From Octopus bimaculoides (Eukaryota), in assembly GCF_001194135.2 (NCBI RefSeq), contig NC_068993.1, forward strand, positions 28,391,864 to 28,437,822: DNA of 45,959 bases. Direction: 5' to 3'. The position numbers were made by a program, and so were the translations under genes. Shown here piece by piece: positions 8,780 through 36,254 of the stretch (positions within the stretch are counted from its first letter, which is position 1; the number at the start of each line of letters is the position of its first letter). The notes beneath the pieces are model-generated. The model had not been told where the DNA came from, searched no databases, and worked only from the letters and a program-made list of their open reading frames with translations.

Positions 8780-9340
8780 CCAGGTGATGAGAGGTTAGAA
8801 TATGAATAGAGGGACTGAGATAGGTGCCTTGCAGTAAAGGAGAGCCATGGCTGCCTCAGCTGAAGAGAGAGAGAGAGAGAGGGAGAAGATGTTACAAGCA
8901 GGTGTATTAAATAAAGCAAAACTAAAGGTTGGATAAGTTGAGTGGGTGGGTAAGTTCACAAAATTGGTAAAGGAGAGAGAGAGCAATGGAGGGGAGGTAA
9001 TGTGAGTGGACACAGTTAGATGGAGGGGTGTTAGGAGGATATGTCGTGAAGAGATTCAACCGGGATACATTATGTACAGGTAAGTTTGCATGTGTGTGAA
9101 GGTAGATAGACAGACAACCTGATCATGCAGGTAACTAGGATATATCCCACTCCACCAGATCTTTTAAGCATCTTGGCAGTAATTCTTGATGGGCCAGGAG
9201 ATTTCCCTGTCTTTATATCTTTAGAATACAGTGAGTGGTGAACTTGGATGGAGGGAAGGAGGTGGTGTTAGGAAAATGGGCTGTGGAAGAGAGGTTTGTC
9301 AGGGACAGATTGTGAGGCACAACATCTTAAGAGCATTTTT
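8780..9340 (-). mobile_element. Degenerate, probably Penelope-like fragment interrupted by a 113-bp RTE segment
   Basis: C/T-rich reverse complement resembling the GIY-YIG and 3' region of the element at 27645-29050; weak similarity judged by eye. Confidence 0.45.
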
Positions 9341-9344
9341 ACCA

Positions 9345-11210
9345 CTTCATCCCATGTCTTTGTAACTCCTGTTCAATAAGCTCCCTCCACATTTTAGAAA
9401 TCAGTACTTCTGTATGCAACTGTTCTCATCTGTACACATCACATGATCACACCAACACAGTTTTCTCTCTTGCACACTATATCTAATGCTTCTTACACCC
9501 AATTCGTAATTTGTTATACACGTACACTGACATTGCACATCCAGTGAAGCATGCTAGCTTCATTTCTTTCAAGCTTTTGCATGCCCTCTGTATCCACAGC
9601 CCATATTTCACTAACATGTAGTATAACTATTCTTACACAAGCATCATACAATTTGTCTCACTCTGAGAAAGAGAGCTCCTTTGTTACCAACAAAAATAAT
9701 AGCCCTCTGTACTTTGCCCAGCTGATTCTTATTCTAGCAACTACACTTTCAGAGCTTCCTCATCCACAGCTAATTTGGTCACCTAAGTAACAGAAACTAT
9801 CTACTACTGCTAAGGATCTTTCTGAGCACTGGAAGAAATCTATTTCCTGTGTATTCTTAGTGTTTATTGTTCCTGCACATCTGCCACACACAAAGACTAC
9901 TTTTTCTATTAACTTTCCTGTGATTCCACTGCATCTTCTATTTATCCATAGCATGCACCTGGAATTTGTACCTATACCTTTACTACATATTGAGTAAGAC
10001 TGTTTCCCCGAAGAGATTAGTAACTTGTCTGCTTTTCTGCTTACTAATATTTTGGTATTTGCTGATTTAACTCTAAGGCCCTTTTATTCCAGGCCTTGCT
10101 TCCACACCTGAAATTTTTCTTTAATTCTAATATAGATTCAGCTATAAGAACATGGTCATCAACATAGAAGAGCCCTCATGAGCAACCAATTTTAAATTCC
10201 ATAGGCCTGGAGGACTATGATAAGCAGTTTAGTGGTGCACACTAAATTTGTTGCTATTCTCTTAGCTGACTTTCATCTTACAGACATCATCCCTGTACAT
10301 AGTTTGGATAGCTCTCCCCCACCACTCATTTAACCCTAACTTCTGCAGCAGCACCAAATGAGAAAACAAGTAACCCCGTTTCTCCATGTCAACAAATGCC
10401 AGGTACAGCAGTTTATTTTTGGTTGAATGCTTCTCCTGCATTTGCTTTACTAGGAAGATAGCATCAGTAGTGCTTCTCCATGGCATAATGCAAACTGCAC
10501 TTCATCTCAGTTAGCTTTCTTCCTAGTTAGTTGAGCTATGATCCTTTCTGCTACTTTCATGATCTGGTTCAGTAATTTGATACCTCAATAATTACTTCTG
10601 TCCAAAGTATCTCCTTTTCCTTTGTAGTGGTTGATTGAAGGACTAGTCGTTGAGCATGGTCCTTTTCCAGACAACCTGATCATGCAGGTAACTAGGATGT
10701 ATCCCACTCCACCAGATCTTTTAAGCATCTTGGCAGTAATTCTTGATGGGCCAGGGGATTTCCCTGTCTTCATATCTTTAATTGCTTTACCTATCATGCT
10801 GCTATCAACTTGGATAGCTAGTTCCTCTATCAGGTCCATATTAGGAAGACTTTTTTCTATGCATTCTTCACATTTAAGCAGCCTTTCGAAGTGGAACTGC
10901 CATGTCTCTTTCGCTTGGTGCAAGTTTAACATCATCAGTTTGAAGACACTTCTCTCCTACATCATGATTTTCTCTAATACACTGTCCCGCAATCCAGAAA
11001 ACGTCATCTCTCTGATCCTCAACCACAGAACATTGGTAAACCTCTTCCTTTCTGCTTTTCTCTTAGTTAAATATACTTATCACCTAGCTTCTCTTCTAGC
11101 TACCTGGTATAGTTCTCTGTTACCAAACTCTTCCAGTTCTTTTATGCCTGTTTCTCTATTCTTATGGTATTGTCTACTTCACTGTTTCACCACCACATCA
11201 CCCCAGATTT
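9345..11210 (-). mobile_element. RTE-clade LINE, degenerate ORF (EN-RT linker, RT, C-terminal region)
   Basis: WQFHFERLL...KAIKDMKTGKSPGPSRITAKMLK; MPWRSTTDAIFLVKQMQEK...LYLAFVDMEK; VVDSFCYLGDQIS; stops and frameshifts. Confidence 0.9.
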
Positions 11211-11289
11211 GATTGGAACTTTGCACCAACCACAAATTCAGTCTGTGGTCCTCAGTAGGCTATCCTATAGGACTTTCCAATTGTCTTAT

Positions 11290-12100
11290 TTGTTATACAA
11301 GTGAAAGCTTATGCTCCTCCAGAAATTGTTATTTTGTTGAAGGTTGTGGATGAATGTTTTTCTATTGGCAAAAATGCTAAGAATCTCTGACAGGGCTTTC
11401 CATTATAACAGTATCGAACCACAATTACCAGCTGGTCAACATGTGTCATGTTAGGTGTAGAGTCAACAATAATTGAGTAGTATTTGATGTCTAGGTTGTT
11501 GGTCTGATTCACTACTTCATCTTTCACATGTTTTCCCATGATTTCTACCAAATCCTCATACACAGATTTGGATAGGTAAGTAATATTTACTTTTTCATTT
11601 TTACATTTCCCTAAATGTTCATGTAAAAATGAGTCAAACTATGCAATAAGCCCAATGCCCCCCCCCCCATGAAATTTCCATTGTTTGGGGAGCCCCACTT
11701 TTCCTCATGACCTCTAAATGCTAAACCTCTTTCACTTAAAAACTTTATAACTGCTACAACTCTTTTTAGTACTTCAAAATAGTACTGCATGTTTTTTTCT
11801 CAACTGTTCCTCAAGTTGCTGATCCACAGTGTTTTTTAATTGACTCTCACGTTAGCCAGATCAACATCACCCTGTTATGTTCCATGTTGTCTTAATGATT
11901 TTCTAGAGTTCTGAGTATATTCATCCAATCAGAAAACCCACCTGTTGTAAGTGATATTTGGCATTTAGAAAAGAGTTTGCTCTTTGAGTAAACTAACCAG
12001 GATGTCATCAAAGTCTGACAATTTTTTCAATCTTTTTTTTCAAAGTACTTCTTTGAGAAACTTCAATTTTACTGTTTGTAAATCTTGTTGGATTCAGTAT
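11290..12100 (-). mobile_element. hAT transposase remnant (TTF zinc finger plus DUF4371/ZMYM1-like region)
   Basis: GGFSDWMNILRTLENH; LKRVVAVIKFLSERGLAFRGHEEKWGSPNNGNF; YLSKSVYEDLVEIMGKHVK...YYSIIVDSTPNMTHVDQLVIVVRY. Confidence 0.88.
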
Positions 12101-12194
12101 ATACATTATTTGGTTTTTTTATTTTGAAAAAAATTGATGTCTTGCATTAAACAGTTTTGTATGAAATCATTATCAATTGTTATGGGCCAGATAC

Positions 12195-34899: not shown

Positions 34900-35180
34900 A
34901 TACAATTGTCATTACTGTATTGATAAATAAAATAACACATATATCTCATTATTATCATGTAATAAACAAACAGAACTTCATGTATAAAAATGATCTTTTT
35001 TCTACTTCAATTATTACATGTTTTTTTCTTATAAAAATATCGTATCATTGCCATTACTGTATAGATAAATAAAATAACAAATGCAACTCATTTATTACTG
35101 TCATATCATAAACAACACAAGTATGATATTGATCTTTCTTCTACTTCAATTATTACATGGTTTTCTCTTCTAAAAATACA
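34900..35180 (+). repeat. Diverged tandem duplication of a ~140-bp AT-rich unit
   Basis: ttg(t/c)cattactgtat.gataaataaaataaca...gatcttt..tctacttcaattattacatg occurs twice. Confidence 0.8.
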
Positions 35181-35296
35181 CACATACAGTAGGAGCAAAT
35201 TATAAGTATAATAATGCTTTCAATGTGGCTCTTGATAAACAGTAAAAGTAATTACTTGATCAACGATGGGTTTTACTGCAAGTATACATATATATA

Positions 35297-35735
35297 GGCG
35301 TAGGAGTGGCTATGCGGTAAGTAGCTTGCTTACTAACCACATAGTTCCGGGTTCATTCCCACTGCGTGGCACCTTGGGCAAGTGTCTTCTACTATAGCCT
35401 CGAGCTGACCAAAAGCTTTGTGAGTGGATTTGGTAGACGGAAACTGAAAGAAGCCTGTTGTATATATGTATATATATATATATGAATGCATGTATGTGTG
35501 TGTGTTTGTGTGTCTGTATTTGTCCCCCCAACACTGCTTGACAACCGATGCTGGTGTGTTTACGTCCCCGTAACTTAGCGATTCGGCAAAAGACACTGAT
35601 AGAATAAGTACTAGGTTTACAAAGAATAAGTCCTGGGGTTGATTTGCTTGACTAAAGGCGGTGCTCCAGCATGGCTGCAGTCAATTGACTGAAACAAGTA
35701 AAAGAGAAAGAGAGAGAGAAAGAGTAAAAGAGATA
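35297..35735 (+). mobile_element. SINE family A, full length
   Basis: ggcgtaggagtggc head, gggttcattccc B box, both halves. Confidence 0.9.
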
Positions 35736-36146
35736 TACAATGGGCTTCTTTCAATGTCTCTCTACCACTCACAAAGTTTTGTGAACAAAACCTTGTGAGT
35801 GCTGAAGAAGTTTGCTCACACAACTATATATATGGTTTCAGGTTTGATCTCATTGTGCAGCACTTTGGGCAGTGTCTTCTATAGTAGCCTCAGTTTAATC
35901 AAAGATTTATGATTGAAATTTGGTAATGGAAACCATGTGAAAGCCCATTCCAAGGAGTATTTCTGTTCTGAAGTTGTACACTTAATCCAGTTTAACCACC
36001 ACCTGGCTTTGGAGTGCCTTTTGCGAGCTTTGTGCCAAGTCTCTAGTCAGAGGATAACTTCCTTCCACCAGTCACTGAAAGGAGCCTTCCTCTTCTGACT
36101 AAGCCACATGTAGAAACACACACATGCATGCATGCACACATGCACA

Positions 36147-36218
<72 letters not shown>

Positions 36219-36254
36219 GAAGAAACTTACTTGTACCTCTAGATAAATTTTGCC

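What the first reader, a model, noticed from the sequence alone, without database searches (positions are those of the whole stretch)
9111..36239. Recurrent short copies from a donor 1.4-1.6 kb downstream, placed in unrelated transposons
Three independent same-orientation duplications share one geometry: 9111-9223 vs 10668-10780 (offset 1557), 16672-16752 vs 18236-18316 (offset 1564) and 34601-34817 vs 36005-36239 (offset 1404). In each, the downstream copy appears to sit in its native context (clear for the RTE and hAT ORFs, weaker for the LINE-like third case), while the upstream copy interrupts a different element (Penelope-like, Gypsy, Helitron). No TSDs, tails or termini are evident. Seen: sequences and offsets. 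Inference: cis-templated insertions made during break repair (polymerase-theta end joining or template switching), with a possible preferred distance. n=3, so the similar offsets may be coincidence.
Basis: partly seen in the sequence, partly recalled or inferred. Interest (0 to 1): 0.72.

Follow-up and report, generated by a model that had tools for sequence, protein, structure and literature searches.

The report
Short nearby DNA copies from break repair
Three (really four) 80-240 bp pieces of octopus DNA were copied in the same direction to a spot about 1.5 kb away, most likely when broken DNA was patched from nearby sequence; this kind of event is already described in vertebrates, so only its frequency and tight spacing here are curious.

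Summary
The window is Octopus bimaculoides draft sequence. The three same-strand pairs sit at the stated coordinates: 97.3%, 93.8% and about 98% identity, with offsets of 1557, 1564 and 1404 bp. Their edges are razor sharp, and no N gap lies inside any pair. A fourth, older pair lies at 38797-38923 / 40209-40347 (offset 1412-1426).

Donors 1 and 2 are in native context, in an RTE reverse transcriptase and in the 5' part of a hAT element. Acceptor 3 replaces about 280-345 bp of a Helitron helicase, as two paralogous Helitron copies show. The "Penelope-like" host of acceptor 1 is not supported. That copy lies 44 nt after the stop codon of the same RTE that holds the donor.

Two more events occur in other O. 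bimaculoides loci, with offsets of 1527 and 965 bp. One has a perfect 14-bp target-site duplication.

Size (mean 158 bp), distance, strand, and deletion or filler at a breakpoint match the "repair-mediated duplications" of Pace et al. 2009 and the "nearby doublets" of Thomas et al. 2004. So this is a new member of a known kind.

The break-repair reading is supported. A specific role for polymerase theta is not. The tight clustering of offsets at 1.40-1.56 kb (5 of 6 events, p about 0.001-0.007) remains unexplained.

The parts
9111..9223 (+). Acceptor copy 1 (113 bp). It lies 44 nt 3' of the stop codon of the minus-strand RTE, and the sequence to its left is non-coding.
   Evidence: 97.3% identical to 10668-10780. 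The RTE stop codon is at 9270-9268. It is only 78% identical to another RTE fragment at 31189-31276. No Pfam domain is found in 7900-9110.
10668..10780 (+). Donor 1, inside the N-terminal part of the RTE reverse-transcriptase ORF (encoded on the minus strand).
   Evidence: An open frame runs through it with native RT sequence on both sides. RTE homologues align colinearly across it.
9224..11285 (-). 5'-truncated, decayed RTE-clade non-LTR retrotransposon. It carries RT and the C-terminal region but no endonuclease domain.
   Evidence: tblastn of homologues P0001-P0081 covers 11285 to 9322, leaving about 25 residues. There are many in-frame stops.
16672..16752 (+). Acceptor copy 2 (81 bp), about 120 bp 3' of an LTR-retrotransposon pol C-terminal remnant and 1 kb 5' of the hAT terminus.
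   Evidence: 93.8% identical to 18236-18316. It carries derived changes relative to the hAT family (Pro to Ser, Trp to stop). Its flanks are not hAT.
16328..16552 (+). C-terminal integrase-like remnant of an LTR-retrotransposon pol, cut upstream by gap 15841-16219.
   Evidence: 52% identity over 44 aa to the pol ORF at 13308-14177, E=2e-16.
18236..18316 (+). Donor 2, encoding the start of the conserved N-terminal part of a hAT (DUF4371/ZMYM1-like) transposase.
   Evidence: Family proteins P0241, P0245 and P0247 carry ADPPQ.TEEQNSNINLKDI.MWPAKF in context. O. vulgaris and O. sinensis copies are colinear over window 17756-18786.
17752..18786 (+). 5' portion of a hAT element. Homology to three copies starts at about 17752 and is broken at 18786.
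   Evidence: blastn against L004 and L005 gives 86-89% identity, and the ends of homology were inspected directly.
34601..34817 (+). Acceptor copy 3 (217 bp, containing a (CA)n tract). It replaces about 280-345 bp of the Helitron helicase C-terminal region. Three nt (AAA) on its left and up to 11 nt on its right are unassigned.
   Evidence: Helitron paralogues L001 and L003 match the window up to 34597 and again from 34829-34834, but not in between.
36005..36239 (+). Presumed donor 3 (235 bp). Its native context is not verified.
   Evidence: It is identical to the acceptor over the 142 bp before the microsatellite, and its (CA)n tract is 18 bp longer. No other copy exists in about 190 kb of octopus sequence.
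32730..35294 (+). Decayed Helitron (Pif1-like helicase region and 3' sequence), followed by a SINE at 35294-35705.
   Evidence: It is colinear with L003 9161-11320 at 80-88%. Protein hits to Helitron helicases include the locus's own gene model P0121.
38797..38923 (+). Upstream copy of a fourth, older direct pair. Which copy is the donor is not known.
   Evidence: A gapped local alignment to 40209-40347 gives about 85% identity, with a 38-bp core at 92%.
40209..40347 (+). Downstream copy of the fourth pair (offset 1412-1426).

Best explanation
Each pair is a repair-mediated duplication. A chromosome break at the acceptor site was mended by a pathway that first copied a short stretch (about 80-250 bp) from a template 1-1.5 kb away. 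The template lay on the same chromosome, or on its sister or homologue, and was copied in the same orientation. The newly made DNA was then joined to the other broken end. Plausible routes are synthesis-dependent strand annealing (SDSA) with an ectopic nearby template, or an equivalent replicative template switch.

The result is a sharp-edged extra copy. Sometimes sequence is lost or a few filler bases are added at the break, and sometimes a staggered break is filled in as a target-site duplication.

Shown here: the copies, their sharp edges, the native context of donors 1 and 2, the deletion-plus-insertion at acceptor 3, independent decay of both copies, and recurrence elsewhere in the genome.

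Inferred: that a double-strand break started each event, which polymerase or pathway copied the template, and why the template lies about 1.4-1.56 kb away.
For: 1. There are three high-identity same-strand pairs plus a fourth older one. None is tandem and none spans a gap.

2. Acceptor 3 is foreign sequence inside an otherwise colinear Helitron. About 280-345 bp is deleted, and 3 nt and up to 11 nt of unassigned bases sit at the junctions.

3. Donors 1 and 2 lie in native TE context.

4. The copies have diverged like real paralogues. In pair 2, both copies carry derived changes relative to the hAT family. All 8 substitutions in pairs 1-2 are transitions.

5. Identities range from 100% to about 85%, which suggests a continuing process.

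6. The same type of event occurs in other O. bimaculoides loci. In L003, 254-500 is an exact copy of 1781-2027 (offset 1527), lies inside a SINE, and is flanked by a perfect 14-bp TSD. In L001, 11204-11367 is a copy of helicase 10239-10403 (offset 965).

7. The match to published human events is quantitative. Human repair-mediated duplications have a mean length of 162 bp and a maximum of 619 bp. Their donors lie within 5 kb, with a peak or mean near 1.2 kb. Their acceptors are in TEs, and their breakpoints show microhomology, deletion, filler and TSDs of 4-21 nt, with no poly(A) (PMC2671141). Here the mean length is 158 bp and the mean distance 1405 bp.
Against: - No empty site or raw reads could be examined, so the insertion status of acceptors 1 and 2 and any microhomology remain untested.
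- Genome-wide uniqueness of the donors is unknown. Copies 1 and 2 belong to multi-copy TE families, so a closer donor elsewhere cannot be excluded.
- The deletion at acceptor 3 (about 300 bp, estimated from paralogues) is larger than the 1-15 nt reported for human events.
- The very tight spacing is seen only in a short-read Meraculous assembly. About 100 kb of long-read O. vulgaris and O. sinensis sequence showed only one comparable direct pair (offset 1213).
- The native context of donor 3 is not shown.
Confidence: 0.7

Rival explanations
1. Assembly artefact. The short-read assembler or its gap closer placed sequence from about one library insert-length away, or from a paralogous repeat, into the acceptor sites.
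For: The source is a gapped short-read assembly; from memory, not retrieved, it was built with Meraculous. The offsets are suspiciously uniform, with 5 of 6 in a 160-bp band. Two events (L003 and pair 3 outside its microsatellite) are 100% identical. Long-read assemblies of congeners did not show the same band in about 100 kb.
Against: - Pairs 1, 2 and 4 are only 97%, 94% and about 85% identical, and derived changes are present in both copies.
- No acceptor touches an N gap.
- Each acceptor would need two false joins with no shared k-mers between acceptor and donor flanks.
- The distance from the last variant to the copy end is inconsistent with a fixed k (31, 7/13 and more than 140 nt).
- The L003 copy has a perfect 14-bp TSD.
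- A genuine artefact in the same assembly looks different: L001 16328-16714 / 16725-17111 is 99.7% identical and abuts a 10-N gap.
Confidence: 0.08
2. Coincidental neighbours. The acceptor copies are fragments of other members of the same RTE or hAT families, or are family-level chimeras carried in by a transposing element. They were not copied from the local partner.
For: Donors 1 and 2 belong to multi-copy families. The genome could not be searched for closer donors or for repeated junctions.
Against: - An 81-113 bp internal TE fragment with two sharp breaks is not a normal transposition product.
- Copy 1 is 97% identical to its neighbour but only 78% to the other RTE fragment in the window.
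- Copy 2 is 94% identical to its neighbour but 89% to the congener copies.
- Helitron paralogues lack the pair-3 block.
- Same strand in 6 of 6 events and the narrow distance band are not expected from chance neighbours.
Confidence: 0.1
3. RNA-mediated origin. A LINE reverse transcriptase copied a piece of local transcript and inserted it nearby, or jumped templates during target-primed reverse transcription (TPRT).
For: Acceptor 1 abuts the 3' end region of the RTE whose RT segment it repeats. The L003 copy has a 14-bp TSD and ends in a (TTA)n tract, as RTE-type tails can. RTE elements are reported as recently active in octopus (PMC9115989).
Against: - Copies 1 and 2 are internal segments without the 3' end of any element, and they have no tail or TSD.
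- Donor 2 is a DNA transposon and acceptor 3 replaces sequence.
- Copy 1 differs from its donor by 2.7% while the RTE itself carries about 8-10 in-frame stops. This suggests the copy was made long after the RTE inserted; this is an inference.
- The (TTA)n tract in L003 is also present at the donor.
- In humans, proximal events never had poly(A) tails, though some had TSDs.
Confidence: 0.07
4. Terminal direct repeats of a single mobile element (LTR-like or pseudo-LTR), or a long target-site duplication around a 1.4-kb insertion.
For: The geometry is A-B-A with 80-240 bp repeats. A true LTR pair of this look exists in O. vulgaris L004 at 29283-29561 / 33172-33452, with TG..CA ends.
Against: - The repeats have no TG..CA ends.
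- In pair 1 the donor and the intervening sequence are one continuous RTE ORF.
- In pair 2 the interval contains the hAT 5' terminus.
- In pair 3 both flanks of the upstream copy are colinear Helitron.
- In no case is the interval a discrete insert.
Confidence: 0.02

Closest known systems
[quoted passage not shown]
   Same: - Short copies: mean 162 bp in human versus 158 bp here.
- The donor lies on the same chromosome within a few kb (human peak or mean about 1.2 kb), and the copies are not tandem.
- Acceptors are recognised because they interrupt TEs.
- Breakpoints show deletion, filler or TSD, and there is no poly(A).
- The events have a range of ages.
   Different: - Described only in vertebrates; this is a cephalopod.
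- The spacing here is 1.40-1.56 kb and much tighter.
- The apparent density is far higher: 6 events in about 98 kb here, against 0.62 per Mb of TE DNA from a conservative human pipeline. This sample is small and partly chosen because it contained such events.
- The deletion at acceptor 3 is about 300 bp, against 1-15 nt in human.
- Empty orthologous sites, used there as proof, could not be examined here.
'Nearby doublets' (Thomas et al. 2004, PNAS 101:10349). Cited by Pace et al.; details are from my memory of the abstract because the paper is not held.
   Same: Short paired duplications on the same strand, at a characteristic distance of about 1 kb. They arise by insertion of a copy without disturbing the surrounding sequence, and were reported in human, mouse, Arabidopsis and C. 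elegans.
   Different: Doublets were defined as exact 25-100 bp matches, whereas the pairs here are 81-247 bp and partly diverged. The characteristic distance here is about 1.5 kb rather than about 1 kb.
Polymerase-theta-mediated end joining / SD-MMEJ templated insertions
   Same: Break repair that copies nearby sequence into the junction.
   Different: Those insertions are small and are templated from sequence next to the break using microhomology (PMC7407515). Here the inserts are 81-247 bp from 1-1.5 kb away, and microhomology could not be assessed.
Replicative template switching (FoSTeS/MMBIR) with short templated insertions at rearrangement junctions (from general knowledge)
   Same: Segments of tens to hundreds of bp, copied from nearby in cis and inserted at a breakpoint that may also carry a deletion.
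   Different: It is usually described in complex rearrangements with microhomology at each switch. The events here are simple single insertions, and their junction homology is untested.

Membership tests
Repair-mediated duplication (Pace et al. 2009) | The acceptor is an insertion of at least 50 bp that interrupts an otherwise colinear transposable element. | tested here: met
   Met for pair 3: Helitron paralogues L001 and L003 are colinear with the window up to 34597 and from about 34829. It is inconclusive for pairs 1 and 2, because no close paralogue of the host sequence was available.
Repair-mediated duplication (Pace et al. 2009) | There is one parental copy only, on the same chromosome within 5 kb, and more than 50 bp away (not tandem). 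| tested here: inconclusive
   Within the window and about 145 kb of other octopus sequence, each acceptor has exactly one close partner, 965-1564 bp away. Genome-wide uniqueness could not be tested.
Repair-mediated duplication (Pace et al. 2009) | Short length (human mean 162 bp, median 147, maximum 619). | tested here: met
   The lengths are 113, 81, 217, about 127, 247 and 165 bp, with a mean of 158 bp.
Repair-mediated duplication (Pace et al. 2009) | No poly(A/T) tail or other hallmark of retrotransposition at the acceptor. | tested here: met
   None of the three window acceptors has a tail or a TSD. The L003 acceptor has a 14-bp TSD. TSDs of 4-21 nt occurred in 6 of 39 human proximal RDs.
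Repair-mediated duplication (Pace et al. 2009) | Breakpoints carry microhomology, small deletions or filler. | tested here: inconclusive
   Pair 3 shows a deletion (about 280-345 bp by paralogue comparison) plus 3 nt and up to 11 nt of unassigned bases. Microhomology cannot be scored without the pre-insertion sequence.
Repair-mediated duplication (Pace et al. 2009) | An empty orthologous site exists in a related species or allele. | not testable with these tools
   No tool here can search eukaryotic genomes by DNA. Look-ups of window ORFs in read-based assemblies found nothing.
Nearby doublets (Thomas et al. 2004) | Both copies lie on the same strand at a characteristic distance of about 1 kb. 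| tested here: met
   All 6 events are same-strand. Five of the six offsets fall in 1404-1564 bp. The distance is about 1.5 kb rather than about 1 kb.
Polymerase-theta end joining, templated insertion | A small insertion copied from sequence immediately flanking the break. | tested here: not met
   The inserts are 81-247 bp and come from 965-1564 bp away. The review describes 'small templated insertions'.
Non-LTR retrotransposition (5'-truncated copy or template-jump chimera) | The copy includes the 3' end or tail of the source RNA and is flanked by a TSD. | tested here: not met
   Copies 1 and 2 are internal segments of an RT and a transposase gene. Neither has a tail or a TSD. Only the L003 event has a TSD and a microsatellite end.
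LTR pair / terminal direct repeats of one element | TG..CA ends, a TSD, and an interior that belongs to the same element. | tested here: not met
   There are no TG..CA ends, and the interiors are parts of an RTE, of hAT plus unrelated DNA, and of a Helitron plus a SINE. A contrast is the true LTR pair in L004.
Gap-flanking duplication artefact of draft assemblies | Near-identical copies that abut an N gap. | tested here: not met
   No copy touches a gap, and the identities are 94-98% for pairs 1-2. A positive example of the artefact is L001 16328-16714 / 16725-17111, 99.7% identical across a 10-N gap.

The most novel reading that the evidence does not exclude
Octopus genomes make repair-mediated duplications far more often than vertebrates, perhaps tens of events per Mb. 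They also place the template at a sharply defined distance of about 1.4-1.56 kb on the same strand. This would point to a physical ruler in break repair, such as resection length, a chromatin loop, or a multiple of the nucleosome repeat. Such a ruler would differ between lineages and could finally explain the unexplained 'about 1 kb' spacing of mammalian doublets.
Probability: 0.2. Interest if true: 0.6.

Novelty: new member of a known kind. Interest (0 to 1): 0.35.

Why it matters
Short proximal duplications are a known but little-studied source of new sequence. [quoted passage not shown]

Finding them in a cephalopod extends the process beyond vertebrates and the few model genomes in which doublets were seen. 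If the high density and the narrow 1.4-1.56 kb spacing hold genome-wide, octopus would be a good system to ask what sets the donor-acceptor distance, which is unexplained in any species.

There is also a practical point for annotation. These blocks break TE and gene models. The UniProt model A0A0L8FFD6, for example, ends just before acceptor 3.

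Tried and rejected
1. I first read weak protein similarity as meaning that the upstream copy of pair 3 was native helicase sequence. DNA alignment with paralogous Helitrons refuted this.

2. Tandem 5'-truncated RTE copies, or a TPRT template jump, as the origin of pair 1. 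I rejected this because the copy would need a second deletion, and because it is much less diverged from its donor than the decayed RTE suggests.

3. A long TSD around an inserted interval, or LTR-like ends. The anatomy rejects both.

4. A de Bruijn k-mer artefact. The distances from the last variant to the copy end are inconsistent.

5. Pfam scans of single ORF fragments and of six-frame translations of 7900-9110 and 16753-18135 gave nothing useful for the host elements.

6. Exact-ORF look-ups meant to find independent read-based contigs of the junctions all failed.

7. The Albertin et al. 2015 genome paper and Thomas et al. 2004 are not held. Library insert sizes and the exact doublet statistics could therefore not be checked.

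8. An apparent pair in 'L002' was a file mix-up. The pair belongs to L003.

Full report
**Source and observation.** The window is Octopus bimaculoides draft sequence. The UniProt gene model A0A0L8FFD6_OCTBM (P0121) matches window 33153-33338 and 33686-34486 almost residue for residue. Paralogous loci were fetched from assembly GCA_001194135.2. The window is 37% G+C and has seven N gaps.

- Pair 1: 9111-9223 vs 10668-10780, 113 bp, 97.3% identity, offset 1557.
- Pair 2: 16672-16752 vs 18236-18316, 81 bp, 93.8% identity, offset 1564.
- Pair 3: 34601-34817 vs 36005-36239, offset 1404. It is identical over the first 142 bp. A (CA)n tract then follows that is 18 bp longer in the downstream copy.

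All pairs are same-strand, with E-values from 2e-28 to 1.4e-94. Similarity stops abruptly at both ends. No gap lies inside any pair, so the offsets are measured and not estimated. Gap 27921-27988 separates two colinear halves of one SINE copy. The other gaps could not be tested and do not bear on the finding.

An unbiased k-mer and BLAST scan found one more local direct pair: 38797-38923 vs 40209-40347, about 85% identical with indels, offset 1412-1426. Apart from SINE family copies and short tandem arrays, these four are the only local direct repeats in the window.

**Pair 1.** A decayed, 5'-truncated RTE-clade retrotransposon lies on the minus strand from about 11285 down to about 9224. The downstream copy encodes the start of the RT domain and is continuous with RT sequence on both sides, so it is native.

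The RTE ORF ends at a stop codon at 9270-9268. The upstream copy begins 44 nt beyond it in the element's 3' direction. It therefore lies in or just past the 3' UTR of the same element that holds the donor. The 1.2 kb further on has no Pfam domain in any frame, and no long ORFs occur upstream. The Penelope-like host is therefore not supported.

The copy is 97% identical to its neighbour but only 78% identical to another RTE fragment in the window. The RTE carries roughly 8-10 in-frame stops, yet the two copies differ at only 3 of 113 sites. I infer that the copy was made from an already dead element, not during its insertion.

**Pair 2.** The downstream copy encodes ADPPQATEEQNSNINLKDIRMWPAKF. 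Family proteins carry this segment in the same context. hAT copies from O. vulgaris (L004) and O. sinensis (L005) are colinear with window 17756-18786 at 86-89%. Homology to all of them starts at about 17752, which is the likely 5' terminus, and is broken at 18786. The donor is therefore native.

The upstream copy sits 1 kb outside that terminus. It lies about 120 bp after a pol C-terminal remnant of an LTR retrotransposon, in sequence with no recognisable domain. Compared with the family consensus, the upstream copy has Pro to Ser and Trp to stop, and the downstream copy has Gly to Arg. Both copies have therefore decayed since they separated. All eight substitutions in pairs 1 and 2 are transitions. 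This is what real paralogues look like. It is not what a consensus built from the same reads would look like.

**Pair 3.** A Helitron with a Pif1-like helicase runs on the plus strand. Two paralogous copies (L001, L003) are colinear with the window from 32730 to 34597 and again from 34829-34834 to 35294, where a SINE is inserted. Between those points the paralogues carry 280-345 bp of helicase C-terminal sequence. The window instead carries the 217-bp upstream copy, plus AAA on its left and up to 11 nt of unassigned sequence on its right. The helicase C-terminus is not found elsewhere in the window.

Acceptor 3 is therefore a deletion plus a templated insertion. I had first thought the upstream copy was native, on weak protein similarity, but the DNA comparison showed that was wrong. 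The native context of the downstream copy could not be verified.

**Recurrence elsewhere in the genome.** In about 53 kb (non-N) of three other O. bimaculoides loci there are two further events. These loci were fetched because they carry Helitron helicase genes.
- L003 254-500 is a 100% copy of 1781-2027 (247 bp, offset 1527). It is inserted in a SINE and flanked by a perfect 14-bp duplication, TAAAATCCACTCGC.
- L001 11204-11367 is an 88.5% copy of helicase 10239-10403 (165 bp, offset 965). It lies in the 3' region of that Helitron.

A further direct pair in L001 (offset 1207) reflects two adjacent Helitron copies. Another (offset 397, 99.7% identity) abuts a 10-N gap and is a typical assembly artefact. 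That artefact is a useful contrast with the pairs under study.

In 101 kb of long-read O. vulgaris and O. sinensis sequence I found only four comparable pairs:
- one comparable direct pair (161 bp, 84%, offset 1213);
- a 40-bp direct pair (offset 3286);
- two short inverted pairs (51 bp at offset 2905, and 42 bp at offset 1216).

A 281-bp pair at offset 3889 is a true LTR pair.

**Interpretation.** The size, strand, distance, TE-embedded acceptors, deletion or filler or TSD at breakpoints, lack of tails and spread of ages fit the repair-mediated duplications of Pace et al. 2009. That study found 824 proximal events in human, with a mean length of 162 bp and a maximum of 619 bp. Donors lay within 5 kb, with a histogram peak or mean near 1.2 kb. 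Breakpoints showed microhomology, deletions, filler and TSDs of 4-21 nt, and none had poly(A). The authors attributed the events to SDSA-like repair (PMC2671141). They also link them to the same-strand 'doublets' of Thomas et al. 2004, spaced about 1 kb apart. Here the mean length is 158 bp and the mean distance 1405 bp.

It is a known class, however. The tie to polymerase theta is unsupported, because that pathway is known for small, break-adjacent templated insertions (PMC7407515).

**Rivals.**
- Assembly artefact, about 0.08. Evidence against it: the 94-98% identities with decay in both copies; the absence of adjacent gaps; the need for two false joins per site with no shared k-mers; and the 14-bp TSD in L003.
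- Chance neighbours or family-level chimeras, about 0.10. This cannot be excluded without the whole genome. It does not explain 6 of 6 events being same-strand, or the narrow distance band.
- RNA-mediated copying, about 0.07. It fits only the L003 event and the position of acceptor 1.
- LTR-like or long-TSD structures. These are contradicted by the anatomy.

**What remains unexplained.** Five of the six offsets fall between 1404 and 1564 bp. In simulation this has p about 0.001 under a lognormal distance law with median 1.2 kb and sigma 0.6, and p about 0.007 under a much tighter law. Two readings remain open. Octopus may have a sharply defined donor-acceptor distance, which would be a real clue to the mechanism. 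Alternatively, something about this short-read assembly may contribute. I could not retrieve the library insert sizes.

The apparent density is 6 events in about 98 kb, against 0.62 per Mb of TE DNA in the conservative human screen. This is striking. It rests, however, on a window that was flagged because it held such pairs, and on TE-rich loci.

**Verdict.** This is a new member of a known kind, of moderate to low interest (0.35). The genome-wide distance histogram and read-level validation are the steps that could raise or end that interest.

Noticed in passing
L003:254-500 and L003:1781-2027 (O. bimaculoides CM046601.1): A 247-bp exact copy lies 1527 bp from its partner, inside a SINE. It is flanked by a perfect 14-bp target-site duplication (TAAAATCCACTCGC) and bounded by (AG)n and (TTA)n tracts. 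It is the youngest and cleanest example of the phenomenon.
   Followed up: partly
L001:10239-10403 and L001:11204-11367 (O. bimaculoides CM046602.1): A 165-bp helicase fragment is copied 965 bp downstream into the 3' region of another Helitron copy (88.5% identity, same strand).
   Followed up: partly
L001:16328-16714 and L001:16725-17111: A 387-bp tandem duplication at 99.7% identity straddles a 10-N gap. This is a typical gap-flanking assembly artefact in the chromosome-scale assembly.
   Followed up: no
window 33153-34486: The UniProt entry A0A0L8FFD6_OCTBM ('ATP-dependent DNA helicase') is a gene model built on this decayed Helitron. It skips in-frame stops by splicing and ends 114 bp before acceptor 3.
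   Followed up: partly
window 9142, 9199, 9214 and 16679, 16683, 16706, 16731, 16739: All eight differences between the copies of pairs 1 and 2 are transitions (A/G or C/T), and none is at an obvious CpG. The sample is too small to interpret.
   Followed up: partly
window 31171-31452 (minus) and 31525-31893 (plus): Two fragments of a second RTE family lie head to head in inverted orientation, 70 bp apart. The N-terminal RT part is on one strand and the C-terminal part on the other.
   Followed up: no
window 11318-12023 (minus): A second hAT (DUF4371) transposase fragment, covering residues of about 172-422 of homologues, directly abuts the 5'-truncated end of the RTE at about 11285.
   Followed up: no
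window 14190-14563 and 31985-32370: An inverted pair of a 380-bp repeat (90% identity) is also present in L003 at 2830-3157 (88-91%). It is an unclassified interspersed repeat family.
   Followed up: no
window 23-285, 22951-23347, 25459-25822, 27771-28191, 35294-35705, 42129-42515: There are six copies of a roughly 400-bp SINE-like family (75-88% identity), also abundant in O. vulgaris L004. The copy at 27771-28191 spans gap 27921-27988 colinearly. The gap hides about 30-55 bp rather than the 68 N written.
   Followed up: partly
window 40733-41351 (minus): ORF fragments carry pogo/Tigger-like DDE transposase motifs (…GGLTSQLQPLDV…), about 400 bp from the downstream copy of the fourth pair. I recognised them by eye only.
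   Followed up: no
L004:29283-29561 and L004:33172-33452 (O. vulgaris OX597814.1): A 280-bp direct pair at 95% identity has TG…CA ends and lies 3.9 kb apart. It is an LTR retrotransposon, with a related LTR in O. sinensis L005 at 11921-12199.
   Followed up: no
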